Shown here: in pieces, positions 37,496 to 59,327 of the stretch
How positions within the stretch are numbered: position 1 is the first letter of the stretch
Layout of the letters: each line of letters starts with the position of its first letter
NCBI RefSeq assembly: GCF_902652985.1
Contig: NC_047023.1
Span: 32,488,001-32,552,000, forward strand
Reading direction: 5' to 3'
DNA: 64,000 bases
Origin: Pecten maximus
Lineage: Eukaryota
Program-made: the position numbers and the translations under genes
The notes under the pieces: model-generated
What the model saw: the letters and a program-made list of their open reading frames with translations, nothing else
Told to the model about the DNA's origin: nothing
Databases searched by the model: none

Positions 37496-39215
37496 TACCT
37501 GTTACTATATTGATGTGTTGAAAAAACAAGAAAATGTGCACATTTATTCATTGTATGGCACATTCGTTCATTGTTAATCGTTGATGAAAGTTTTCAGTAA
37601 CAATATTGACACTTCCATAGTTGATTTTATTAATCCGACACTTTCATCCATGAAATCTTTCACATAAATAATTTCCTTAAATAGACAATAAAGTTATACA
37701 TCATCAAAAGTAAGGTTCTCATGAAATGTAAATTACATGTATGTTGTGATGAATTTGGCATATAGAGTTAAAAGATCATAATGCGTGTCGGAAAGGGGAG
37801 ATAACTGGTTCATGACTATAGATTTTTGTGGAGTAGTCCTAGTCCCTACAAATGTAACTGACAGAAGTACGTCGGTACAAAATCAACAGTCAACGAATTC
37901 ATGGAAGACTATCAGAATCCATTGTTACACAGCCTAACATTTAATGACTAGGCTGAAATTAATTGAGACTGTCCGTTTATACTAAACGATTCATGAACTA
38001 ATAATGGATGTCTTTTGTTACAAAGCCAGTTTAAGTCCGATATTGAATTCTAGAGTGTATTAACCAGTTAATGGACGACTCAATTAATAATATGGTGTAA
38101 GTATGACTATCAATAGATAGATGTTTTATATCGTCACGTGGCAAATAATAATGAACAGATTAAAATCAGATGTTAAACTGAAATGACATGCAATGTCCCA
38201 GTAATGAATTGTACATACAAGACTGTACTTATACAATGTAACCATGACTGTAACCCTGGATATCAATGACTTAATGGAAATCACCAGAAGATTTAATGAA
38301 TTTGAATTGGACGTTAACCCGACTGCCAAGTAAAACATGATTACATTTAATGTTATATACATGTGTTTGACCATTGTCCAGATCATAGATTCCAAATCGG
38401 GCGCTGATCATGTATACCGACGAAGAGCTATTTCTTTCTGTGGAAGAACGTGTATCAACAATACATTTTTAATTGAGGTTCCACAAACCTCCTAAACAAT
38501 GCTGAAAATTCTGGCAATGCTCCGAAATGATTGCCAGAAATCTCCCACATATGTTGCGCTCAACTTGTCAGTGAGAATTGTATAATGTCTAGGCTATGGT
38601 AAGACCTTAATTGAAAAGTAATAGTATTTCAATAAATTAAACTTGTACTTCAGCCAGACACACAAAATAATTAAATTCCTGCGATAAGAATATTATATCC
38701 TCAATATGTATTTAAATTATGATCTTATTTAGGTTAATAGAATAATGTGGTGTTGAAATTAAAGTGAGCTCACCGAATGTCAACACCATTTTCAAAACAG
38801 CACGTCGTGTGTGTATGCATTAATGATAGACTATTAAAGTAGCACTAGCACCCAGCTAGGGGCAGTAATCATGCACCGCCCAGTTATCAAGACAACACAA
38901 TTGAAAACATGTATGAACTTAATATGTTGGAAACGAAATTCAACTCATGCCGTCCTGAACGAAGCCCGCTAGGTTCTGGACGAAACAAGCCGATAAGGTT
39001 GCCTGTCGGTGACAAAAACATACAAGAAATTTTGATCGTATCGGTCAGTACCAAATACGAGTTGAGGACACACATTAACAAAACATATTAAGAGAAATAA
39101 ATTAAAAGTTATATTAATACACACAATAATTTAATTAAACTTATCACAGGTTTTAGACACTCTGTACAGTAGTGTCTTTGAATGTTCCACGTAATCCACT
39201 TAGCTACATGTCAAT

Positions 39216-42200
39216 TTAATTAAATATCTTAAAACTTTTGTTGAAAAGTTTGAAACTAGAACTGTTTTTCTTGGTAGGTCCCTTTTCGTCCTTTTTGTCC
39301 GGTCCGGCCCGAGGTGATTTGGGGCGCCTTTGAGCGGCATGGAATTTTTCTTCAGAAATGAACAGAGGTTGAAAGTTCACGTGACGATCTCCTTTCTCAC
39401 GCTGTATCTCGTGAATGATCCCATGGAACACATCTTCAACGTACTCAAACTCCTCAGCTGCCGTTGTCTCGAAAAATAAACTTTCAAACTCTTGTGCTAG
39501 CGTGTTTCCTTCTACTTTACTAATTTGCCTAAAATCAAGGGAAAAGATATGAAGAATATAAGAAAAAATGAGATATTGATAATTGGTTACAGTCCAGGTA
39601 CAATATGTACCCCACAGGGGCTCAACACTAATTAAACTCTTATGGTAATAAATATCAAATAAATACAGTATTATAACAGTATATCACAAAGGAAGGGGAG
39701 GCTTAATTCGTTAAAAACTCGAAATAAACGTCACTGCATGAGGACGTCATTTGACCCATTTGGTCCTTGTAATGTATTGCATTCGAAAAAAAAATAAAGA
39801 AATGCACCGCTGTAGATGGATGGGAAATACTAGATGGATACAATGTAGGGGGGTAGACATTAGTCTTTGCACAACTTTCCAACCGAACATATACGACTAT
39901 AGAATCAAAAATTTGTGCCTCGGATCGTCACTATGGAAATACATAATTTTTTACTCTTGTACCAGACCGCCGGAACTTTGCTATTCCAAACAATCGGAAA
40001 TAAAACGTGTTTTATCAATAAATCTATAAGTACATGTGTGGGGTAGTTTGGGCGTGGCCGACCTACCACAGATAGATCAGACATCTGTTTCAGAACATTC
40101 AAACACATCCTCCACTACAGAGACGTTCGTCAGCAATCAAGTGGGGATAGATAGATATAAACAAATACACTACAACTTAACGGTAACTATCACAGGGACT
40201 TGTCACAAATCCCCAGTTCAACATCCCGTATTAAAGGGGCATGCCTTCGTCCGGACTTCATAAACATGTACAGTTTCTATTGATGAAATCTATGTCCGAA
40301 CGATGATTATATGACTGTCTGTGCCTATATGTAATGCAATTAACGCCGAACTGTACAGGGAAAAGGTGTAGTGTATATATACCGTATGTCTTTGCGGTAA
40401 TTAGTGATACTTCGGGTTGAATTACGAATTTTCAGGACTTAATACTCGAAGAACTTTTGTTCATCTTGAGAGTAAAACTGCCATATTAATGTAAAGATTA
40501 TAACATTTACTACTTGGAAAAAATACGTAGTTTCCAGTAAGTTTAATTTTGTCGACCTAAACTTTATTCAAACGAAGGAATGCCCCTTTAAGTGTATCAT
40601 AATTTAATACGTGTACACATTTTGATGCCGAATTCCTATGACAAACTCCACAGCTAGGACGACATTTTCGCTTGCTACTATAGCTGGATGCGGCCTAAAA
40701 GTGTTTGGTAAATATTTAAGTAAAATGTCTAAATTTAGCCAGATCATTCATTTTTGCGGTGTTCATTTAGAGCCTAAATATTAAACTATTTCACAGAATC
40801 AAAATTACTATAAAGTAGGACGATATATACAAAAAGCTTACACCAGACAACACTATCCTCGATATTCCAAGGGTTACTTCACGTTCGACCTTTGCACGAG
40901 ATAACTAAATGAATTTGTAGCCCTTGGATTAGAAGATGGGGAGGGATAGGACATTATACAGGTTCGGTTGGTATTTGATGTAGCATTCGAGAAGGAGAAA
41001 GGAAACATGGCCGAGTAGCCCATTTCCGTATCATTAACTACACAATCGAGACTATTAATGTGTAACTATTCAATACATGTACATATGTATAACTGTTTTA
41101 TAAATGAACAATTAAAAATAACGATGCAAAAACTTGAACATTCTGACCGAAATAATTGCCGTTATCACTACTATTTCGTCAATGTTCCGAACACTGCATA
41201 CATTTTAATTTACAGGGCTCGATTTTCCGAATTTTGAGTAATGTACGACATCAGTTAATAACAACAACACTAAATATTCAGTCATCATACAATAAAAACT
41301 TGTAAATATCGGCCGGGATATCGATGTATAAAAAGCGATACCTCCGATTTTAGTTTAATTTTTAGAATGTGCATAATTACTGGATTTTTAGTGTTATGGT
41401 TATTTACTAATGTTATACATTACTCAGCATCCTCAAACCGACACCTTCTGCGTATTTGTGTTCTGATAAAAATTGTCGATAAACGTCGATCAGCTGTCAT
41501 GCTGTAGCGTGTATGAAATCGTATGTCAGGTTGCTCTGTTGTCACCAATCCGGTTCTCATTTTGAGAACGTGACATTTACTAGATTTGACTCAAATTTAC
41601 GTCACGGGTGCTGCCGTAATGCAGAAGACGCTCGCCCAACACTGGTCTTATCATCTTTATACCTTTTCAACCATATTCATGTTAATCTATGTTTTTATAA
41701 CCATCTTCATGTTAATCTATGTTTCCTTAATATGTTTTGCTCTCGTTTTCTCGATTTTATGTCAGTACTCACTGTGTTTTTATATCGTTTACATTAAAAA
41801 GATAAAAGTATCAGTCAGGTCACATTCGTCATATTTCAAACTTTACAACTTTCGTCATACATACCGATATCGTTCGAGATCTATTTTATTTCCAACCAGG
41901 GCCACAGGCGAATCTTTGGAGTTGGCTTTGAGGTATTGTGTGACACTCTCTAAATATTCCCGCGCTTTATCAAAACTCTGTCGGCTTGTGATCCCGTACA
42001 CCACCATGAAGCCGTCTGCCCATCGTAGATACCGCAAGGGGTCGCTGTCTTCCTGGCGGCAAAACAAACAACCAAATCGTTCATGAGGTACCATTCATGA
42101 GGAGATATTGATTTTACTCCAAATGTTTACGCCATCATTCCAATAATGAATATGGCTGAGATACCATAACGTATTTTTCCAAAATTAAGTTTCTTAAGTA

Positions 42201-44347
42201 TATACATTGTATGTGGTTTTACAAGTTATTAACGATTCTCATGTACGAGTATACTGCGAAATTGTTATCATATATATATAGTGTCCTTTTATTTTCGCTG
42301 TCAGTGCCCGTGTTTTAATCTGAGAGCTTGGCATCAGCTGTTTTTGACGAATATTTACATTAAGAGTGGAATGAATGGAACAGAAGGCACTTTCCATCTT
42401 AGAACACACGGTCTTATAATATGTATACGTTGTTAGGCTGTCCTGCAGGTAAGTGATCTTTAGAGGCGACTAAATTTAAGACCTTTATCTTCGTTCACGC
42501 CCCATTGATTCTGCCTCACTTTTGTTATATAGTTAAATTAAACTTAATCAAAACTAATTAAAAACTAATGCATGACACATTCTAGCAACACATCCAATAC
42601 ACGTCACTTATCCATTGTTCACAAACACATTCCTTAAATCCTTCATCGGGTCACTTCTGAACTTTATAGGTTTCTTATTCATATGCCATGCATAATAGGT
42701 TTATTATAAACTGTAAACGATGTACAATATATGAACCAATCACAATATCAATATCAACAAATTGTAGAATTTAAGAATGACCTAGGTAGGATTGAAAAAC
42801 AACAACATATAGATGTACTTGTTCACACGATTGTTGGTTTTCTTAGAAACGGTCACTTAGGCGAATAAAAAATTGAACTGTTTTAAAAACAAACGCACTG
42901 TCATCTTTAGATAATTCATTATTTCCACACAATATCAAGTTTAGGCGTACAGGCTGATGGTGTAACAGCTGATCAAACATTTCACGTTTAATATTTATGT
43001 AATTTGGACATTAGACAAAGTATTGACAAGACGTTTTACTCACTTTATCGTAGGTATCCATGACGTGAATACACATTTCTGTTCCGTCTATGTCTTCATG
43101 CTTTGTATAGGTGTCCTCTGTAACAACAACGGTGCCATAGGTTCAAACGATTATTATGGTGGCTATCAACACATTTTTTACTTGTTTGTTTGTTTTTGTT
43201 TTTGTTTTTTTGTTTATTGGTTTTTTTTTTCGTTTTTCCATCCGAGGAAGCGAATTTGTGCCATCACAAGACGAAAAGAAATCTCCTTTCTTAGCCATAA
43301 TCTAGCGAGTTATTCATGATATTTTTATATGCATTAGGCGTTTAATTATTTCGATAAAGCATTGTGTAATTTAACTTGGTGCTGTGTGAAATGCACGACA
43401 TTATTTTCGTAGTGACAAAGCACAAAAAGGCACCACGAAAGTTGACTTGAATATATATATACATATATATCTGAATGACGTCTAGCTAACATATAACATG
43501 TGCACCATGATAATTTTTCGATTGTTCATTACAATGTTTAGTTTATAAGCTTTTATAAAGTCCTTGCTGAAGAAGAGTTTCAATGGAAATAGAGGAAATA
43601 ATAAGTTGATATACTTACCAATGTTGGGGTCATACTCCATGATGGACCGTTGTGTTCTGTACTTACCGATGTTGGGGTCATACTCCATGATGAACCGTCG
43701 TGTTCTGTACTTACCGATGTTGGGGTCATACTCCATGATGAACCGTCGTGTTCTGTACTTACCGATGTTGGGGTCATACTCCATGATGAACCGTCGTGTT
43801 CTGTACTTACCAATGTTGGGGTCATACTCCATGATGGACCGTCGTGTTCTGTACTTACCAATGTTGGGATCATACTCCATGATGGACCGTCGTGTTCTGT
43901 ACTTACCAATGTTGGGGTCATACTCCACGATGAACCGTCGTGTTCTGTACTTACCGATGTTGGGGTCATACTCCATGATGAACCGTCGTGTTCTGTACTT
44001 ACCGATGTTGGGGTCATACTCCATGATGAACCGTCGTGTTCTGTACTTACCAATATTGGGGTCATACTCCATGATGAACCGTCGTGTTCTGTACTTACCA
44101 ATGTTGGGGTCATACTCCATGATGAACCGTCGTGTTCTGTACTTACCAATGTTGGAGTCATACTCCACGATGAACCTTCGTGTTCTGTACTTACCAATGT
44201 TGGGGTCATACTCCATGATGAACCGTCGTGTTCTGTACTTACCAATGTTGGGGTCATACTCCATGATGAACCGTCGTGTTCTGTACTTACCAATGTTGGG
44301 GTCATACTCCATGATGAACCGCCGTGTTATGTACTTCACTGTTAGAG
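39216..44347 (-). CDS. RASL12: Ras-like protein family member 12-like small GTPase (5'-partial; G1/P-loop exon not found)
   Basis: Phase-consistent exons: 44347-44291 (ALTVKYITRRFIMEYDPNI), 43117-43044 (EDTYTKHEDIDGTEMCIHVMDTYDK), 42052-41865 (...YLRWADGFMVVY...LVGNKIDLERYR) and 39528-39216 (...FFETTAAEEFEYV...PLFISEE...FKIFN*). EYDPN-EDTY, the DTxD-type G3, PLFISEE and terminal FKIF with no CAAX all match RASL12 as I recall it. Confidence 0.9.
40235..40587. mobile_element. Non-autonomous Kolobok-type DNA transposon
   Basis: 16-bp TIR AGGGGCAT(G/T)CCTTCGT with a TTAA target duplication at 40231-40234 and 40588-40591. Confidence 0.85.
43611..44338 (-). repeat. 48-bp minisatellite (15 copies) made of the RASL12 exon 3' end plus its 5' splice site
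   Basis: Sense unit GTAAGTACAGAACACGACGGTTCATCATGGAGTATGACCCCAACATTG; possible exon ends at 44291 - 48n, down to 43619. Confidence 0.97.
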
Positions 44348-45592
44348 CTACAAAGGAGAGAAACAAGAGTCAAGAAACTGTCAAACGAGACAAAATACCA
44401 CAACAGGGTAGATGTTTAAATACAGGATGGCATGGAAACACAAAGCCAGAACCGTCAACTCCCTGTTTGGCCAGTACAAGACAAAGTGCATTGATAAGGT
44501 CACTGAACAGCGTCATTTTGACCTTTCTTCCCTCGCTTCATTCAACGAGGAATCAACTTAGGACGCAAACATTACGATATCCCAGAAATGTCAGTTGACA
44601 TTGGCGATATAGACATACATGTTACAGTCTAGGTGGTCATATCGTAGTGTGTTTAGTTAGCCCCATTGTAATACAGATATTTTAGACGGGCTACATCAAT
44701 ATTCGACAAAAAGGAAAACCCTCTCTTGGAGCTATACGGGTTTTATTTTTACCGAATGTTCATATAACCCCCTAAATATGTCTCAGAATAATCTAAACAC
44801 ACTAAGATAGTCCAAATAACATTGGCAAACACATTTTTAAGCCTCTGAAAGAAACTGTTTACCATTTCTGACATGGTAATAGTACACATAACAAAGCCCG
44901 AAAGGTAAATATGCTTTGATCGTACATTCCGATAACATTATATCTAATACCTTCAATTATTTGGAAAAATATACATGTATATATGTCCCAAGAAACCTTT
45001 GTCAATTTGAAAGTTGTGAAAATATTTAAAAAGAAAAAAAACAATCTGAACCGTATCGAACGGTTAACGTCAAATTATATTTATCATCAATATGACTGTA
45101 ATTGAGAGATATACAGGGAGCTGTAACTGTACAGCTATGTAATAGGCTCAACTGCTATCCCTTACATGCTTCCTACACGCACGTATGCGATAACATCATA
45201 TTCGAAGGAATGGCACAGACACTTTCTTGTTTTTCATTATGTTTGTGAACGAATGTTTCTTTGTCCTTGTAGGTATGTTTGGCATAGACTTTAAGTTACG
45301 TAAGTAATATCTCAAAACTATCTCTAGAGAAGCGTTACGGCTGCAAAGGTTGCCAGCACTCCGGTATCACCGACCTTGGATGCTTTTTACGTATGTAGCT
45401 GTGTGTTACACGTACAGTTTTCATGTTACACATGAACAAAATAAGCTGGGCTATTTACTCGTGTAAACGTGTGTTACATGTACAGAGCTGTATGTTACAT
45501 ATGCTGATATGAGTTACACGTGTAAATGTCTGTTCCACATGTGTACTTAATGTTTTATTGTAAAAAAATACAGATGTATTATTAATAATGAG

Positions 45593-45985
45593 TAACACGT
45601 ATGACAATGCTTTCCACCTGTATACTTTGTTGTATGGATAACACGAATGACAATGATTTACACCTGTATACTTTGTTGTATGGATAATACGTATGACAAT
45701 GATTTACACCTGTATACTTTGTTCTATAGTTACACGTATGACAATGATTTACACCTGTATACTTTGTTGTATGGATAACACGTATGGCAATGCTTCAATC
45801 TTGTATTGCAGTGTATCGTAGAGGAACGGAAATAACAAGTCTAATTTTAATTAGATTGGACAATGGTTCACACCTGTATACTGATAGTAGTTGTATGCGT
45901 TACACGTATGACAATGCTTTACACCTGTATATTTTGTTGTATAGTTACACGTATGACAATGTTTTCCACCTGTATAATCAGTTGT
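45593..45985. repeat. 46-bp tandem repeat interrupted by a MITE fragment (45796-45858)
   Basis: acacgtatgacaatg.tttacacctgtatactttgttgtatggata, ~7 copies. Confidence 0.85.
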
Positions 45986-46321: not shown

Positions 46322-49300
46322 TTTGTAATACTGTTTTTACTTCCTTTGTTATACTGTTTTTACTTCCTTTGTAATACTGTTTTTATCTTCTTTGTAATAC
46401 TGTTTTTATTTCCTTTGTAATACTGTTTTATCCCCTTTGTAATACTGGTTTTATTTCCTTTGTAATACTGTTTTTACCTCCTTTGTAATACTGTTTTTAG
46501 CTCCTTTATAATACTGTTTTTATCCCCTTTGTAATACTGTTTTTATCCCCTTTGTAATACTGTTTTTATTTCCTTTGTGATAATGTTTTTACCTCCTTTG
46601 TAATACTGTTTTTATCCCCTTTGTAATACTGTTTTTACCCCCTTTGTAATACTGGTTTTATTTCCTTTGTTATACTGTTTTTATCTTCTTTGTAATACTG
46701 TTTTCACTTCCTTTGTAATAATGTTTTTACCTCCTTTGTAATACTGTTCTTACCCCATTTGTAATACTGGTTTTATTTCCTTTGTAATACTGTTTTACCT
46801 CCTTTGTAATACTGTTTTTATCTTCTTTGTAATACTGGTTTTATTTCTTTTGTAATACTGTTTTTATTTCCTTTGTAATACTGTTTTTATCCCCTTTGTA
46901 ATACTGGTTTTATTTCCTTTGTAATACTGTTTTTATTTCCTTTGTAATACTGTTTTTATCCCCTTTGTAATACTGTTTTTATCCCCTTTGTAATACTGTT
47001 TTCACTTCCTTTGTAATAATGTTTTTATCCCCTTTGTAATACTGTTTTTATCCCCTTTGTAATACTGTTTTACCTCCTTTGTAATACTGTTTTTATCCCC
47101 TTTGTGATACTGTTTTTATCCCCTTTGTAATACTGTTTTTATCCCCTTTGTAATACTGTTTTTATCCCCTTTGTAATACTGTTTTTATCCCCTTTGTAAT
47201 ACTGTTTTTATTTCCTTTGTAATACTGTTTTTATCTTCTTTGTAATACTGTTTTTACCCCCTTTGTAATACTGTTTTTACCTCCTTTGTAATACTGTTTT
47301 TATCCCCTTTGTAATACTGTTTTTACCTCCTTTGTAATACTGTTTTTACCCTTTGTAATACTGTTTTTACTTCCTTTGTAATACTGTTTTATTCCCTTTG
47401 TAATACTGTTTTTACTTCCTTTGTAATACTGTTTTTATCCCCTTTGTAATGTTTTAACCTCCTTTGTAATACTGTTTTTATCCTTTAATATGTTTATCTC
47501 TTTGTAATACTGTTTTAGCCCCCTTTGTAATACTGTTTTTTACCTCCTTTGTAATACTGTTTTTACCTCCTTTGTAATACTGTTTTACTTCCTTTGTAAT
47601 ACTGTTTTTACCTCCTTTGTAATACTGTTTTACTTCCTTTGTAATACTGTTTTTACCTCCTTTGTAATACTGTTTTTACTTCCTTTGTAATACCGTTTTT
47701 ACCCCTTTGTAATACTGTTTTTACATCCTTTGTAATACTGTTTTTACTTCCTTTGTAATACTGTTTTTACCCCATTTGTAATACTGTTTTTATCCCCTTT
47801 GTAATACTGTTTTTATCCCCTTTGTAATACTGGTTTTATTTCCTTTGTAATACTGTTTTTATCCCCTTTGTAATACTGTTTTTATCCCCTTTGTAATACT
47901 GTTTTTATCCCCTTTGTAATACTGGTTTTATTTCCTTTGTAATACTGTTTTTATCCCCTTTGAAATACTGTTTTTATCCCCTTTGAAATACTGTTTTTAT
48001 CCCCTTTGTAATACTGTTTTTATCCCCTTTGAAATACTGTTTTTATCCCCTTTGTAATACTGTTTTTATCCCCTTTGTAATACTGTTTTTATCCCCTTTG
48101 TAATACTGTTTTTATCCCCTTTGTAATACTGTTTTTATCTTCTTTGTAATACTGTTTTTATCTTCTTTGTAATACTGTTTTTATCCCCTTTGTAATACTG
48201 GTTTTATTTCCTTTGTAATACTGTTTTTATCCCCTTTGTAATACTGTTTTTTATCCCCTTTGTAATACTGTTTTTTATCCCCTTTGTAATACTGTTTTTA
48301 TCCCCTTTGTAATACTGTTTTACCTCTTTGTAATACTGGTTTTATTTCCTTTGTAATACTGTTTTTATCCCCTTTGTAATACTGTTTTACCTCTTTGTAA
48401 TACTGGTTTTATTTCCTTTGTAATACTGTTTTTACCTCCTTTTTAATACTGTTTTTATCCCCTTTGTAATACTGTTTTTATCCCCTTTGTAATACTGGTT
48501 TTATCCCCTTTATAATACTGTTTTTATCCCCTTTGTAATACTGTTTTTATCCCCTTTGTAATACTGGTTTTATTTCCTTTGTAATACTGTTTTATCCCCT
48601 TTGTAATACTGGTTTTATCCCCTTTGTAATACTGTTTTTATCTTCTTTGTAATACTGGTTTTATTTCCTTTGTAATACTGTTTTTATTTCCTTTGTAATA
48701 CTGTTTTTAACCCCTTTATAATACTGTTTTGATCCCCTTTGTAATACTGGTTTTATTTCCTTTGTAATACTGGTTTTATTTCCTTTATAATACTGGTTTT
48801 ATTTCCTTTGTAATACTGTTTTTATCCCCTTTGTAATACTGGTTTTATTTCCTTTGTAATACTGGTTTTATTTCCTTTGTAATACTGGTTTTATTTCCTT
48901 TGTAATACTGTTTTTATCCCCTTTGTGATACTGTTTTTATCCCCTTTGTAATACTGTTTTCATCCCCTTTGTAATACTGGTTTTATTTCCTTTGTAATAC
49001 TGTTTTTATCCCCTTTATAATACTGTTTTTATCCCCTTTGTGATACTGTTTTTATCCCCTTTGTAATACTGTTTTTATCCCCTTTGTAATACTGGTTTTA
49101 TTTCCTTTGTAATACTGGTTTTATTTCCTTTGTAATACTGGTTTTATTTCCTTTGTAATACTGTTTTTATCCCCTTTGTAATACTGTTTTTATCCCCTTT
49201 GTAATACTGGTTTTATTTCCTTTGTAATACTGTTTTTACTTCCTTAGTAATACTGGTTTTATTTCCTGTGTAATACTTTATTTAACAGGTATGTCCTTTG

Positions 49301-49330: not shown

Positions 49331-49739
49331 TGATTTTTATCATTGCGTAATCTTTCACATTTGAAAGAAACAACGACTACAACTCTAGGGTTTATTCAGC
49401 ATCTACAGTTCAATACTTTTATTATTTATCAAGGATACCTTGGAGGCCTTCAGTAGTTTGAGAAATTAGTACTAAATCATCACCATATAGCAATACAATC
49501 ATGACTACCCTTGCAGTTCTGTATGAAATATTATTCAAAATCATTTATATACAGAGAAAAATATCGGTGGCAAAATTTCACCCTGTAATAATCCAACTTA
49601 TATTAAGGGGATAAATCAGATCATTATCCTAGATTTAACGTGAGAATATATGAGCTTTACAACGTCTATGATCTTCGTCTTTTTCAAGGTTTGATAGCAT
49701 AAACCATAATTTTGTTCTATTAATCTTATTAAAGGTTTT

Positions 49740-50400
49740 GCGAAAATTCACAAAGCAGCAATACAATTCGTTTTCACTTTAATCCAAATGCTGATTACAC
49801 AATTCTAATTACATAAGTAATATGATGATATACAAAAATACATAACGGTTCAACAATAGTAGGGTATCAGATTATACTGTCACTCCTCTCAGTCCTAATG
49901 ACTGTTTTACGAATAGACAAGTTCTTTGTTTGACCCCACAGTTAAAACATGACAAAATGGTAACAAAATTTTCATCTTCTGACACATCTAATTTCATTTT
50001 ATCCAGACACATTTCTCTAATTTGATCATATAAAGGATATTTACATAAAAGAGTGGATTTCGTTTTCAATAACATTACAAACTTTACAGTCTTAAGTGCG
50101 AAATTCCTGTTTCATTGTCTTATACATAGTTTATTATCTTCATTAAGAGATATAATTTTATCAGTAAATAACTATGCGTGTCTTAGGACTGAATCCTTAA
50201 TTACTTTCTTAGTTTTACTTTTTATTGTGCTATAAGGACATACAAGCCTTTTTGAAATCATTTATTTGATAAGTTCGTGTAGCATCACTTATGAAGGTAT
50301 ACCAGCAATAATTGGTATCATGCAAATGTTTATTTAAAGATAGTGCTTCTTTAACCAGCGGATTTATTGGCAAAATACTTTGAGATATTCTAGACAAGTA
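49740..50400 (-). mobile_element. Old 5'-truncated LINE fragment (RT C-terminus and 3' UTR)
   Basis: The minus strand encodes a broken H-x-L-x-x-(C)PLYDQIR C-terminal zinc-knuckle region followed by ..CLFVKQSLGLR*, typical of non-LTR ORF2 ends. Confidence 0.5.
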
Positions 50401-55055: not shown

Positions 55056-57349
55056 TATTTCAGTTTTGTCTTTCTTTGTGAGCTTAGAGGGAATGGTTTA
55101 TTCAGTTCATCATACACAATGGCTTATACTGTTTACCAAGTATGAATGATACTGAATACATATACTAGTACATAGACAGCTTACATGATAAACTTTGTAT
55201 GTACTAGACCGTGGGGTGGGGATCTGGAACACGCCTCTATGATATAACCCAGCTATCCTCACTAATGCCACACACGCTAAAGGACCCGTGGAACTGATAT
55301 ATCACTATTTATCTTCCATTACAGTAACCCTACCCACTGTATCCATGGAATCCCAGCCACATTTTCCTGTCAGCAACACAAGGGCGTGTGGCGCTCTAAT
55401 TCAGAAATTGACACTATCTATCGAGGAAGATAATGATTCCTCTGCTTGTCACTTCGTTAACGGAGAAAGTCCTGAAGGGAGATTGTAAATGAAAGTTTAG
55501 GGCGCGCCATTTGTTAACGTTACAACACATGAACTTCACGTGTAGATTAGACAAAGGCAGACGCGGATCCGTATGTTTATGATGCATTAAAACACTTTTA
55601 CTTTTCCAAATTAATGTACGTAATCATGCACTACTGTTCTTTCTCTGTATCTAGAAGCATAGGGACTTGGTACGATTTCCCAACACAAGGTTATAATTAA
55701 TCGGTAGGCTTCTGATGTTTCTTATTAAACCTTTTAAAATATGAGTTTGGCCGACAAGATGTTGCTCATGCAATATCATGTATTTTAATAGATATCGGAT
55801 AGGGTCCTTACATATAGGTTTATTATTTATACCAGGCCCCTGTGTATGGAAGGTAGATGTTCAAGGACGTGTGTTAAGTAGCAAGATAAAACATCAACAA
55901 AATGGCGCATGTTTTGCGTTCTCGAAAGGATAACAAGTGATATCCTCTGAACCCTTTTTACAAGTGATGAGCTTAGCTGACTAATATTTAGACGCCATTG
56001 AGCGTGCGGTGAATTGTGTATATCGTATTCGCCCACTTTTGTTCAGATTAGGAAGCGTGTTGCTTATCAAGACGGATTGTTTCTAGGGTAGTGACCGTTT
56101 GTTTTTCGTATCCAAATGAAACATTTAGACAAGTTCTATTGACACCGAACTAGCGCCAATTATACCGTCCTGATAGACACTCTGCCTTCTAACTCGTACA
56201 ACGGGTTTATTTTCCGATATGCTTATTGCCAAAATGGTGGCTATTTCTCAACTATCACAGATAAAGCAGTTGCATTTGCTATCGGATTACTATCGGAAGA
56301 CACGATGGTTTTTGCTGTAATGCATACCAGGAAGTCTGAAAACACATTTTCTAGACGATAAAATTCTGCGATATAATTATAGAATAGTTACTTGGGGTAG
56401 ATGGTATACAGTTCTGTTCCATCTCTGCTTACAATCGGGTCTCTTGAGAGTAAATCGGAAACAACCTTATTTTAATGCCACAAAGAAATTAAAATTGCAC
56501 TATTTGGTTTTTCCTCTAACATAATAAGGTATCTATAAAGATACTTTTTCCGATAATCTTTAAGAACGGATTTATGGAAATATCAAACTTGATTCATTTG
56601 CATGAAATGGATTACTCAAAGCGTTAATAAAACCCTGTAAACCTCGAATGTCTGGATGATACAGCTTATCTCTGCTACACTTCAACTTGTGCTTCCTGAC
56701 ATTTAACTCTTCCTCTTCCTCGCCTATCTCCGTAGTAAACAGAGACAGAGACAGACAGATACAATTATGACGTTATCTTCAATTGGTGTTTTATTTATGA
56801 GTTATCTCGATCATCTAGCTGGCCTTTACATACCTCCACTGCTAAAGAGTTACAGCTAGCATGTATGCAGAATATAGTGTCTGCATGGTGTAGTGCAGGT
56901 AGGCCGAAGAAATAAAGGTGATGCTGACTTGTAAACGCTATTTATTTTATATAATAACATATTGATATTCAATCGTCATACTATGATACTCGTATATGAA
57001 TGACTATATTGTAAATTGGTAAAATTGTCGATCTAATGGAATGTTTTTTTTTTATATGATTGTGACTATTGAGGACTACAGGGTAAACACATATTGGTAA
57101 AAGGAAATGTACACAAGGTAAGTCTGGTTGGAATTAAATCTTTCGGGAACTGATAATGTTATATTGATTTTTATAATTTTGGCATTGGTTGTACAAATCG
57201 CCGTCTGGCTCTATGTTGTGCTAATGCTTGAATTTTGCGAATTTTAACCGTTTGACATAGATCTTGAAACAATCACTAAACTGTCCTGAGCATTTACCTA
57301 AAATATTGAACTATGATTAAACATTGGTAAACACCAATACTACATCCCG

Positions 57350-57725
57350 TACATCAACCCTACATTCCTCTACACCAACCCTACATTCATGTACACCAAC
57401 CCTACATTCATGTACACCAACCCTGCATTCATGTACACCAACCCTGCATTCCTGTACACCAACCCTACATTCATGTACACCAACCCTACATTCATGTACA
57501 CCAACCCTGCATTCCTGTACACCAACCCTGCATTCCTGTACACCAACCTGCATTCCTTTACACCAATACTGCATTCCTGTACACCAACCCTGCATTCCTG
57601 TACACCAACACCGCATTCCTGTACACTAACCCTGCATTCCTGTACACCAACCCTGCATTCCTGTACACCAACACTGCATAACTGTACACGAACCCTGCAT
57701 TCCTGTGCATTAATACTGAATTCCT
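57350..57725. repeat. 21-bp minisatellite (~17 copies)
   Basis: Unit CCAACCCTGCATTCCTGTACA. Confidence 0.95.
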
Positions 57726-57883: not shown

Positions 57884-58685
57884 AGGGAACAATACAAATG
57901 GTGCCTTACCATTATACCATTATACCGCCAGGGGAGTCTTACTGAGGGAACAATACAAATGGTGCCTTACCATTATACCATTATACCTTACCATTATATC
58001 ATTATACCTTACCATTATACTATTATACCATTATACCTTACCATTATACCATTATACTATTATACCATTATACCTTACCATTATACCATTATACCATTAT
58101 ACCTTACCATTATACCATTATACCTTACCATTATACCATTATACCTTACCATTATACCATTATACCTTACCATTATACTATTATACCATTATACCTTACC
58201 ATTATACCATTATACCTTACCATTATACCATTATACCTTACCATTATACCATTATACCTTACCATTATACCATTATACCATTATACCTTACCATTATACC
58301 ATTATACCTTACCATTATACCATTATACCTTACCATTATACCATTATACCTTACCATTATACCATTATACCTTACCATTATACCATTATACCTTACCATT
58401 ATACTATTATACCGCCAGGGGAGTCTTACAACGGGAACAATACAAATGGTGCCTTACCATTATACCATTATACCATTATACCCGCCTGGGGAGTTTTACT
58501 GCGGGAACAATACAAATGGTGCCTTAACACTATACCATTATATCATACCATTATACAATTATACCATACTATTATACCATACCATTATACCATTATACCA
58601 TACCATTATACCATTATACACCATTATACCATTATACCATTATACCATACCATTATACCATTATACACCATTATACCATCTGGGG
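57884..58685. repeat. Compound repeat: CCATTATA / CCATTATACCTTA runs punctuated by a ~40-bp cassette
   Basis: GGGAACAATACAAATGGTGCCTTA occurs 4 times (~57884, 57946, 58433, 58503), separated by variable-length 8/13-bp runs. Confidence 0.93.
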
Positions 58686-58873: not shown

Positions 58874-59327
58874 GTATTAAAAACACAGGAGGGAAACCCG
58901 ATATAAAAACACAGGAGGGAAAACCGATATAAAAACACAGGAGGGAAAACCGATATAAAAACACAGGAGGGAAAACCGATATAAAAACACAGGAGGGAAA
59001 ACCGATATAAAATCACAGGAGGCAAAACCGATATTAAAACACAGGAGGGAAAACCGATATAAAATCACAGGAAGGAAACCGATATTAAAACACAGCAGGG
59101 AAAACCGATATTAAAACACAGGAGGGAAACCCGATATAAAAACACAGGAGGGAAAACCGATATTAAAACACAGCAGGGAAACCCGATATAAAAACACAGG
59201 AGGGAAAACCGATATTAAAACACAGGAGGGAAAACCGATATAAAAACACAGGAGGGAAAACCGATATTAAAACACAGGAGGCAAAACCGATATTAAAATC
59301 ACAGGAGGCAAAACCGATATTAAAACA
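58874..59327. repeat. 26-bp minisatellite (~17 copies)
   Basis: Unit AAAAACACAGGAGGGAAAACCGATAT. Confidence 0.95.

What the first reader, a model, noticed from the sequence alone, without database searches (positions are those of the whole stretch)
43611..44347. Splice-donor repeat that could multiply the GTPase switch-I loop in frame up to 15 times
Seen: 15 equivalent G|GTAAGT donors spaced 48 nt (16 codons) apart, with no stop in the coding frame. Every donor splices in phase to the 43117 exon and adds 0-14 copies of GKYRTRRFIMEYDPNI. The array seems seeded by microhomology between exonic GTGAAGTACA and intronic GTAAGTATA. The units share changes absent from the original exon (ATA>AGA, CGG>CGA), so they expanded from one duplicate. 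Established: EYDP-x-I-EDT is the G2/switch-I effector region of Ras-family proteins. Inference: a ladder of NMD-immune isoforms, and a length-polymorphic tuner of RASL12 activity. The donor nearest the downstream acceptor would give the longest protein.
Basis: partly seen in the sequence, partly recalled or inferred. Interest (0 to 1): 0.8.

Follow-up and report, generated by a model that had tools for sequence, protein, structure and literature searches.

The report
Donor-carrying minisatellite in scallop RASL12
In the scallop Pecten maximus, the last 42 bases of exon 2 of a Ras-like GTPase gene plus its splice donor have been copied 14 times into the following intron; this is a known kind of minisatellite in which normally only the first donor is used, and nothing here shows that the predicted protein ladder is made.

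Summary
On the minus strand, 43619-44338 is a 48-nt x 15 tandem array at 96% identity. Unit 0 is the end of exon 2 of Pecten maximus RASL12. All 15 units end in G|GTAAGT, and the coding frame stays open.

- NCBI's protein XP_033750024.1 matches my five exons exactly and uses the first donor, 44291.
- Transcript contigs from two studies join the exon 3 acceptor to a 30-nt tail found only in units 0, 1, 2 and 4. The donor nearest the acceptor is therefore not the main one.
- All three RNA studies hold array units. One contig runs from the last unit into intron 2 across a non-canonical joint, so at least part of this signal is unspliced RNA.
- Short-read contigs cannot distinguish donor 0 from donors 1, 2 and 4. 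A minor +16/+32-residue ladder is neither shown nor excluded.
- Three other scallop genera lack the array.
- Six of the 14 units carry replacements at residues that are constant in orthologues.

Minisatellites whose first unit spans an exon-intron boundary are already described in human F7, IFI6, CBS, LMNB2 and PDGF. This is a new, in-frame, invertebrate member of that kind. Interest is modest.

The parts
44291..44347 (-). RASL12 exon 2 (57 nt; codes (A)LTVKYITRRFIMEYDPNI plus the first base of Glu). Its last 48 nt (44338-44291) are unit 0 of the array.
   Evidence: Acceptor ..ttgtag| at 44348-44349 and donor G|GTAAGT at 44291|44290. The translation is found at position 30 of P0001.
43619..44290 (-). 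Units 1-14 of the 48-nt array. Each is GTAAGT plus 42 nt copied from exon 2, and each ends in a pseudo-donor G|GTAAGT (cut sites at 44243, 44195 ... 43619).
   Evidence: There are 13 substitutions in 672 nt. Variants shared by neighbouring units (6-7, 9-10, 11-13) indicate expansion in blocks.
44289..44290 (-). GT of the authentic, most upstream donor, used by the annotated mRNA.
   Evidence: The exon-by-exon match to XP_033750024.1 requires the cut at 44291. The RNA contig joint 43117/44291 in X6 agrees but is ambiguous among units 0, 1, 2 and 4.
43617..43618 (-). GT of the last pseudo-donor, the one nearest the acceptor. It would give the 15-unit protein.
   Evidence: It is not the main donor. 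The 30-nt tail of unit 14 (with the TCC variant) differs from the tail seen in the junction contigs.
43118..43618 (-). Original, non-repeated part of intron 2 (501 nt). Its first bases, GTAAGTATA, match the start of the Mizuhopecten intron. About 43311-43614 is missing in one RNA-run contig (deletion allele), and the DNA run X5 has a hole here.
43044..43117 (-). Exon 3 (74 nt; codes (E)DTYTKHEDIDGTEMCIHVMDTYDK), the single acceptor for all 15 donors.
   Evidence: Joints 42051/43043 occur in three RNA runs. Joints at 43117 occur in X6 and X12.
41865..42052 (-). Exon 4 (188 nt; carries the NKID G4 motif).
   Evidence: Pfam Ras E 4e-12. Joints are present in three RNA runs.
39219..39528 (-). Coding part of exon 5, ending ..FKIFN and stop TAA. 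The 3' UTR runs on below 39219.
   Evidence: Pfam Ras. RNA contigs extend to 39000 and beyond.

Best explanation
This is a young minisatellite, specific to the Pecten lineage, whose first unit spans the exon 2 / intron 2 boundary of RASL12. Slippage or unequal exchange between the AAGTA in exonic GTGAAGTA and the AAGTA in intronic GTAAGTA, 48 nt apart, duplicated the exon tail together with the donor. One duplicate carrying ATA>AGA then expanded to 14 copies. The productive mRNA is made from the most upstream, authentic donor at 44291. This fits the 5'-to-3' 'first donor after the exon' rule shown for the human F7 intron 7 minisatellite, and exon definition across the 57-nt exon 2, which follows a 41-kb intron. 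The 14 downstream donors are intronic pseudo-sites. They are seen in RNA mainly as unspliced intron 2. The open frame is a by-product of a unit length divisible by three and of the array's youth, not of selection. At most the first one or two pseudo-donors are used at a low level. Shown here: the anatomy, the gene identity, absence of the array in other genera, the annotated use of donor 1, and that the last donor is not the main one. Inferred: the origin mechanism, the rule that selects the donor, and that the RNA signal comes from intron 2.
For: The anatomy is. All five exons (exon 1 lies outside the window, L005 1283-1196 minus strand, about 40.8 kb upstream) translate into consecutive blocks of XP_033750024.1 only if the cut is at 44291. 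In RNA contigs, exon 3 is joined to a 30-nt tail identical to units 0, 1, 2 and 4 only. Contigs carrying exon 1 plus exon 2 stop at 44291/44292, where the 31-mer graph branches. In X6, a contig runs from a TCC-type last unit through GGTAA straight into 43310 and onwards. The joint is GT..TA, so it is an allele with a deletion and not a splice. RNA in that run therefore reads through the array into intron 2. The array is absent from the orthologous intron in Mizuhopecten, Argopecten and Ylistrum. Units carry F>S (3 units), M>V (2), P>S and R>Q at residues that are constant in molluscan and brachiopod orthologues, except Phe, which is Tyr in Lingula. The window holds about ten other minisatellites, so such arrays are common in this genome. 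For precedent, PMC1557585 reports that only the most upstream of 5-9 identical donors is used in F7, only the authentic one in LMNB2 and PDGF, and the authentic one plus the first two pseudo-sites in IFI6 and CBS.
Against: No 31-mer links a unit-0-specific base to the junction. The contigs therefore cannot separate donor 0 from donors 1, 2 and 4. Array contigs in RNA have depths of 4.7, 6.0 and 4.8, against 5.2, about 2 (inferred from bin depth, no contig listed) and 2.65 for the exon 1-2 contigs, while the unique parts of introns 3 and 4 show no contigs in X6 and X12. Consensus words occur on average 6.5 times in the reference array. The per-copy level of 0.7-0.9 that this implies should have produced several twice-covered islands in 3.1 kb of other intron (P < 0.001). 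The array is thus over-represented relative to introns 3 and 4. Either intron 2 is removed slowly, or the arrays are longer in those animals, or some units sit in mature mRNA. The tool itself warns that contig depths are not a sound measure. The F7 rule was established in mammalian cells, not in molluscs. Classical work on duplicated strong donors (recalled from memory, not checked here) often favours the acceptor-proximal site.
Confidence: 0.6

Rival explanations
1. A short ladder is made. Besides the authentic donor, the first one to four pseudo-donors are used at an appreciable level, as in human IFI6 and CBS. This gives in-frame RASL12 isoforms with +16, +32 ... residues that repeat the end of helix alpha-1 and switch I.
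For: All donors are identical in the nine bases around the cut, and the extended forms have no premature stop. The tail of the junction contig fits units 1, 2 and 4 as well as unit 0, and the aligner placed it at 44099 (unit 4) in X12. Array words in RNA are about as deep as the exon 1-2 contigs and exceed what introns 3 and 4 predict. IFI6 and CBS use two pseudo-sites constitutively (PMC1557585; PMC4526556).
Against: NCBI's models give only the 239-residue form and a 198-residue form that starts at Met42. No protein with two or more units was found, although de Bruijn contigs could not assemble one. The X6 read-through contig shows that unspliced RNA contributes to the array signal. Placement at unit 4 is arbitrary among four identical tails. 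Unit replacements hit conserved residues.
Confidence: 0.27
2. A full ladder, or mainly the longest form, is made. The donor nearest the acceptor, or all 15 donors, are used, and array length tunes RASL12 activity.
For: The donors are equal and in frame. A proximity rule for doubly occupied strong donors is known from in vitro work (recalled from memory, not checked here).
Against: The tails of units 5-14 differ from the tail in the junction contigs of X6 and X12. Consensus array words would then be at least 6.5 times deeper than exons, but they are 0.25 to 1.8 times as deep. The annotation uses donor 1. No sign of purifying selection is detectable in the units: 4 synonymous against 4 replacement variant types, p = 0.06 over all sites and p = 0.69 among transitions.
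Confidence: 0.03
3. Splicing brake. The 14 strong U1-binding pseudo-donors slow removal of intron 2 or cause its retention, so array length lowers RASL12 output without changing the protein.
For: Array RNA is over-represented relative to introns 3 and 4. In X6 the read-through contig from the array into the intron has a depth of 4.07, close to the 5.2 of the exon 1-2 contig.
Against: This rests on contig depths, which the tool says cannot rank parts of a gene. The arrays in those animals are of unknown length. No retained-intron contig was laid at the acceptor side (43118-43172).
Confidence: 0.1

Closest known systems
Human F7 intron 7 37-bp VNTR (Borensztajn et al. 2006, PMC1557585)
   Same: The first monomer spans the exon-intron boundary, so the authentic donor is followed by identical pseudo-donors facing one acceptor. 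The array is length-polymorphic and the most upstream donor is used.
   Different: F7 has a 37-nt unit (not a multiple of three) with only 4 exonic bases, 5-9 copies and a weak donor, TGG/GTGGGT. Here the unit is 48 nt with 42 exonic bases, there are 15 copies, the donor core GTAAGT is perfect, every extended form is in frame, and the host is a mollusc. Donor choice was measured in F7 and has not been measured here.
Human IFI6 (6-16) intron 2 minisatellite and CBS intron 13 minisatellite (cited in PMC1557585; IFI6 also in PMC4526556)
   Same: The minisatellite provides many identical donors after the authentic one. The first two pseudo-sites are used constitutively and give alternative mRNAs. 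This is the model for the 'short ladder' rival.
   Different: Those isoforms were shown by transcript analysis. Here they are only possible. The primary IFI6 paper (Turri 1995) was not held in the library, so unit length and frame were not checked.
Human LMNB2 (100-bp unit) and PDGF intron 4 (81-bp unit) minisatellites (cited in PMC1557585)
   Same: They have 10-18 boundary-spanning units, and only the authentic donor is used.
   Different: They are mammalian genes with longer units, and the details were not examined here.
Human RASL12 (PDB 3c5c)
   Same: It is the best solved relative (E 2e-48, residues 15-180). It shares KSALTVK..RFI.EYDPN.EDTY, including Asn where Ras has Thr35, and a non-canonical G3 motif without the catalytic Gln.
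   Different: No such array is known to me in the human gene (from memory). The scallop protein ends in FKIFN, as all its invertebrate orthologues do.

Membership tests
RASL12 (Ras-like family 12) small GTPase | Ras-fold GTPase domain | tested here: met
   Pfam PF00071 on exon 4 (E 4e-12) and exon 5 (E 5e-5). PF00071 and PF08477 are precomputed on P0001.
RASL12 (Ras-like family 12) small GTPase | Closest relatives are RASL12 proteins rather than other Ras branches | tested here: met
   The best PDB hit is human RASL12 3c5c at 168 bits, against 136 for Rit1 and 110-116 for M-Ras and K-Ras. Database relatives are named RASL12 in nine or more molluscs, Lingula and a nemertean. No phylogeny was made to separate RASL12 from RASL11.
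RASL12 (Ras-like family 12) small GTPase | G1 P-loop GxxxxGKS, G4 NKxD, G5 region; Asn in place of switch-I Thr35; G3 without Gln61 | tested here: met
   GELGVGKS, GNKID, ETTAAE, EYDPNIED and MDTYDK can be read in P0001 and are aligned to 3c5c. The functional meaning is inferred from general Ras knowledge.
Minisatellite whose first monomer spans an exon-intron boundary (F7 / IFI6 / CBS / LMNB2 / PDGF type) | Head-to-tail array whose first unit contains the end of the exon and the authentic donor | tested here: met
Minisatellite whose first monomer spans an exon-intron boundary (F7 / IFI6 / CBS / LMNB2 / PDGF type) | The donor sequence is reiterated identically in the intron | tested here: met
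   All 15 sites read G|GTAAGTA. The bases at -3 to -1 are TTG (10 units) or TCG (5 units).
Minisatellite whose first monomer spans an exon-intron boundary (F7 / IFI6 / CBS / LMNB2 / PDGF type) | Splicing uses the most upstream donor, at most with the next one or two | tested here: inconclusive
   The annotation uses donor 1. The junction tail limits the main donor to units 0, 1, 2 or 4. Short-read contigs cannot go further.
Minisatellite whose first monomer spans an exon-intron boundary (F7 / IFI6 / CBS / LMNB2 / PDGF type) | Copy number varies between individuals | tested here: inconclusive
   The independent DNA run X5 has array-type contigs. From their summed depth I estimate roughly 15-26 units, but this depends on unknown contig lengths. 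X6 carries a different allele downstream of the array. Neither gives a count.

The most novel reading that the evidence does not exclude
Pecten maximus really makes RASL12 proteins with one to a few extra in-frame copies of the alpha-1/switch-I segment. The insertion would sit at the same topological point where G-alpha proteins carry their helical domain. Alternatively, the 14 decoy donors act as a copy-number-dependent brake on intron 2 removal. Either way, a length-polymorphic minisatellite would modulate a Ras-family GTPase within a wild population.
Probability: 0.25. Interest if true: 0.55.

Novelty: new member of a known kind. Interest (0 to 1): 0.3.

Why it matters
Arrays of identical donors facing one acceptor are natural experiments on how the spliceosome picks a 5' splice site. 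The known cases are all mammalian, and in F7 most extended products are out of frame. This array has 15 strong donors, 48 nt apart and all in frame, so extended mRNAs would escape nonsense-mediated decay and donor choice could be read directly from cDNA. It would also test whether the 'most upstream donor wins' rule holds in a mollusc. For RASL12 biology the likely consequence is small: an intronic, probably neutral, recent expansion.

Tried and rejected
1. I searched the 242-residue array reading frame against the 5.8-billion-protein collection. No hit reached E <= 0.001 among 8000 word-sharing candidates, so no predicted protein of 133-423 residues carries several units. This is weak evidence, because 31-mer contigs cannot assemble a 48-nt repeat.

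2. I looked for P. maximus transcript contigs through the look-up of encoding contigs. The Logan contigs returned belong to other scallops. L009 matches Argopecten exon 2. All have a single unit. Records of the window's own species seem to be withheld there.

3. I searched for exon 1 inside the window by P-loop patterns and found none. It lies 40.8 kb upstream, in L005.

4. I considered the short ORF just upstream of exon 2 (44537-44373, ..LVLAKQGVDG..) as a possible first exon. I rejected it because it has no GKS and a poor donor, and the real exon 1 was found elsewhere.

5. I tested the units for selection: 4 synonymous against 4 replacement variant types, p = 0.06 over all sites and p = 0.69 among transitions only. 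There is no usable signal either way.

6. I considered the X6 joint 43310/43807 as a splice and rejected it. Its ends are GT..TA, and it fits a roughly 304-nt deletion directly after a TCC-type last unit.

7. Assembly artefact: rejected for the existence of the array, because unit-to-unit contigs occur in four independent runs. The copy number remains open.

8. Earlier scan notes yielded nothing.

9. The joined, spliced +1 to +14 protein models were not built, searched or folded. Exons were handled one at a time by reference. There is therefore no structure prediction for the extended forms.

Full report
**1. What is in the sequence**

Read on the minus strand, the region holds a short exon. 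It runs from the acceptor ..ttgtag| at 44347 to G|GTAAGT at 44291.

The exon is followed by 14 further copies of a 48-nt unit, down to 43619. The ordinary intron then resumes with GTAAGTATATC.. and runs to the acceptor ..ttacag| before 43117.

Tandem Repeats Finder gives one array at 43612-44336, with period 48, 15.1 copies, 96% matches and no indels.

In register, each unit is GTAAGT plus 42 nt of exon 2. Every unit ends in G|GTAAGTA. Ten units have TTG before the cut and five have TCG.

The 14 extra units carry 13 substitutions in total. Variants are shared by neighbouring units (6-7, 9-10, 11-13), which points to expansion in blocks.

The frame that continues exon 2 stays open for 295 codons.

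Three caveats apply:
- Only 8 of the 14 units encode the stated peptide exactly.
- A second sense frame and an antisense frame are also open.
- A unit made of 42 coding bases plus GTAAGT needs only a length divisible by three to stay in frame, which is about a 1 in 3 coincidence.

**2. The gene**

The exons on the minus strand are 44347-44291, 43117-43044, 42052-41865 and 39528-39219. Exons 4 and 5 hit Pfam Ras.

No P-loop exon exists in the window. It lies 40.8 kb upstream, in L005 at 1283-1196 on the minus strand. It encodes MSGKRV..GELGVGKS plus one base, followed by GTAATG.

A word search with exon 5 returned P0001, which is XP_033750024.1, 'ras-like protein family member 12 isoform X1 [Pecten maximus]'. 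It has 239 residues and sits on a 45,552,881-base contig, the length of the window's own contig.

Each of my five exons translates into a consecutive block of P0001, at positions 0, 30, 49, 73 and 136. NCBI's model therefore uses the first donor, 44291.

The best solved relative is human RASL12, 3c5c, at E 2e-48.

By the P-loop register, the repeated 16 residues correspond to H-Ras 21-36. That is the C-terminal half of helix alpha-1 plus switch I up to the residue before Glu37. Asn stands at the Thr35 position, as in human RASL12. This mapping rests on the alignment and on general Ras knowledge.

**3. Origin and age**

The orthologous genes of Mizuhopecten yessoensis, Argopecten irradians and Ylistrum balloti were fetched as L013-L015. 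Each has a single exon 2 and an intron 2 of about 0.67, 0.74 and 1.9 kb, with no array.

Without the array, the P. maximus intron is 501 nt. Its first bases, GTAAGTATA, match the start of the Mizuhopecten intron, GTGAGTATA. The array therefore arose in the Pecten lineage, between the exon and its original intron.

The unit boundary lies in the AAGTA common to exonic GTGAAGTA and intronic GTAAGTA.

The outgroups settle the polarity of the two 'unit-specific' changes. ATA>AGA is derived and shared by all units, which supports expansion from one duplicate. CGA is ancestral, and the exon's CGG arose after the duplication.

Among the unit variants there are 4 synonymous and 4 replacement types. This does not differ from neutral expectation (p = 0.06 over all sites, p = 0.69 among transitions).

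The replacements are F>S in three units, M>V in two, P>S and R>Q. They fall in ..RRFIMEYDP.., which is constant in the molluscan and brachiopod orthologues apart from a Tyr for Phe in Lingula.

The window holds about ten other minisatellites, including a 23-nt x 130 array in intron 1. Arrays of this kind are common in this genome.

**4. RNA evidence and its limits**

All runs offered were Logan contigs, not reads. I laid three RNA runs from three studies (X6, X8, X12) and one independent DNA run (X5) on 39000-44600.

(a) Spliced joints:
- Exon 5/4 and exon 4/3 joints are present in all three RNA runs.
- The exon 3 acceptor is joined to an array-type tail in X6 and X12.
- The tail is exactly 30 nt long and was placed at 44291 in X6 and at 44099 in X12.
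- Thirty is k-1, so the contig stops where the 31-mer graph branches between TTG|A (spliced) and TTG|G (unit or intron).
- That 30-nt tail occurs only in units 0, 1, 2 and 4.
- Donors 5-14, including the acceptor-proximal one, are therefore not the main donor.
- No 31-mer links the unit-0-specific bases to the junction, so contigs cannot decide among units 0, 1, 2 and 4.

(b) Contigs with exon 1 plus exon 2 end at 44291 or 44292, as expected at that branch.

(c) Array contigs:
- X8 and X12 hold 77-78-nt contigs that are closed cycles of one consensus unit. X6 holds a 66-nt contig that also spans a unit-to-unit junction.
- Their depths are 4.73 (X6), 6.01 (X8) and 4.84 (X12). The exon 1-2 contigs have 5.2 and 2.65, and the exon 3-5 contigs have 20.2, 9.3 and 5.8.
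- If the last donor dominated, these words should be at least 6.5 times deeper than exons, because 6.5 is their mean multiplicity in the reference array. They are not.
- Taken as an upper bound, mature mRNAs could carry on average no more than about one to two extra units.

(d) In X6, a 114-nt contig runs from a TCC-type unit through GGTAA directly into 43310-43279.
- The skipped stretch has GT..TA ends, so this is not a splice.
- It is an allele that lacks about 304 nt after the array. The DNA run X5 has a hole in the same place.
- The contig shows RNA reading from the last unit into intron 2, that is, unspliced intron 2.

(e) An unresolved point:
- If the array signal were ordinary pre-mRNA, the implied per-copy level would be 0.7-0.9.
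- That level should leave several twice-covered islands in the 3.1 kb of unique intron considered (mostly introns 3 and 4). X6 and X12 show none (P < 0.001). X8 shows one or two.
- The array, or intron 2 as a whole, is thus over-represented.
- Possible causes are slower removal of intron 2, longer arrays in those animals, or some use of pseudo-donors.
- The tool warns that contig depths cannot rank parts of a gene, so I treat this as a lead only.

**5. Comparison with what is known**

A literature search led to Borensztajn et al. 2006 (PMC1557585). [quoted passage not shown]

| Human gene | Array | Donor use |
|---|---|---|
| F7 intron 7 | 37-bp unit, 5-9 copies | Only the most upstream donor. 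Pseudo-sites are functional but lose to a 5'-to-3' scanning preference. |
| LMNB2 | 100-bp unit, 10-15 copies | Only the authentic donor. |
| PDGF intron 4 | 81-bp unit, 16-18 copies | Only the authentic donor. |
| IFI6 (6-16) | 25 pseudo-sites | The authentic donor plus the first two pseudo-sites, constitutively (also PMC4526556). |
| CBS intron 13 | 15-20 repeats | The authentic donor plus the first two pseudo-sites. |

The scallop array meets the structural criteria of this class. The behavioural criterion, that the upstream donor is preferred, is compatible with the data here but not proven.

The array differs from the known cases in four ways. It is in a mollusc. It is in frame with a 16-codon unit. 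It carries 42 exonic bases per unit. It sits in the effector loop of a Ras-family GTPase.

**6. Verdict**

The best explanation (confidence about 0.6) is a recent, probably neutral, boundary-spanning minisatellite. Its first donor makes the annotated 239-residue protein. Its other donors are intronic pseudo-sites, seen in RNA largely as unspliced intron 2.

A short in-frame ladder from the first few pseudo-donors remains a live rival (about 0.27). A decoy-donor splicing brake is an overlapping possibility (about 0.1).

The joined +n protein models were not built, searched or folded.

Novelty: a new member of a known kind. Interest: about 0.3. Its main value would be as a natural, NMD-independent reporter of 5' splice-site choice outside mammals.

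Noticed in passing
window 43311-43614 (intron 2, just after the array): RNA run X6 holds a contig that joins the last array unit (..GGTAA) directly to 43310. The independent DNA run X5 has no contig laid over 43173-43674. Together these suggest a common allele lacking about 304 nt, or a strongly divergent haplotype.
   Followed up: partly
window 40122-40682 (intron 4): A dispersed repeat with very high summed depth, in the thousands for DNA run X5 and in the hundreds to thousands for RNA runs, with many loose ends at 40274-40593. It is probably an abundant, transcribed mobile element. A second high-copy stretch lies at about 42553-42926.
   Followed up: no
window 46322-49284 (intron 1): A 23-nt x 130 minisatellite at 89% identity. 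Further arrays lie at 45593-45985, 57331-57706, 57965-58679 and 58878-59327. This stretch of genome is very rich in minisatellites.
   Followed up: no
window about 49425-49778, minus strand (intron 1): Open-frame fragments with a reverse-transcriptase-like YGDD motif (..LLYGDDLVLIS..) and an upstream block. This is probably a decayed retroelement.
   Followed up: no
L005 1196-1283 minus strand (G000:C9:32573196-32573283): RASL12 exon 1 (start codon and P-loop) lies 40.8 kb upstream of exon 2, outside the window. Intron 1 is therefore about 41 kb, against 0.5-2.3 kb for the other introns.
   Followed up: yes
P0031 (XP_033750025.1) and exon 2, window 44291-44347: NCBI isoform X2 of P. maximus RASL12 has 198 residues and starts at Met42 (MEYDPNI..), so it lacks the P-loop. 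Argopecten also has an X2 form, of 221 residues. The alternative 5' exon was not located.
   Followed up: no
exon 3, window 43044-43062: The G3 motif reads MDTYDK instead of DTAGQ, with no catalytic Gln. Most bivalve orthologues have DTCDK, and human RASL12 has DTADLD. As in RASL12 generally, intrinsic GTP hydrolysis is probably atypical.
   Followed up: no
window 39477: T>C (TTA>TTG on the coding strand, Leu, silent) appears in RNA runs X6 and X12 and in DNA run X5, but not in X8. It is a common polymorphism.
   Followed up: partly
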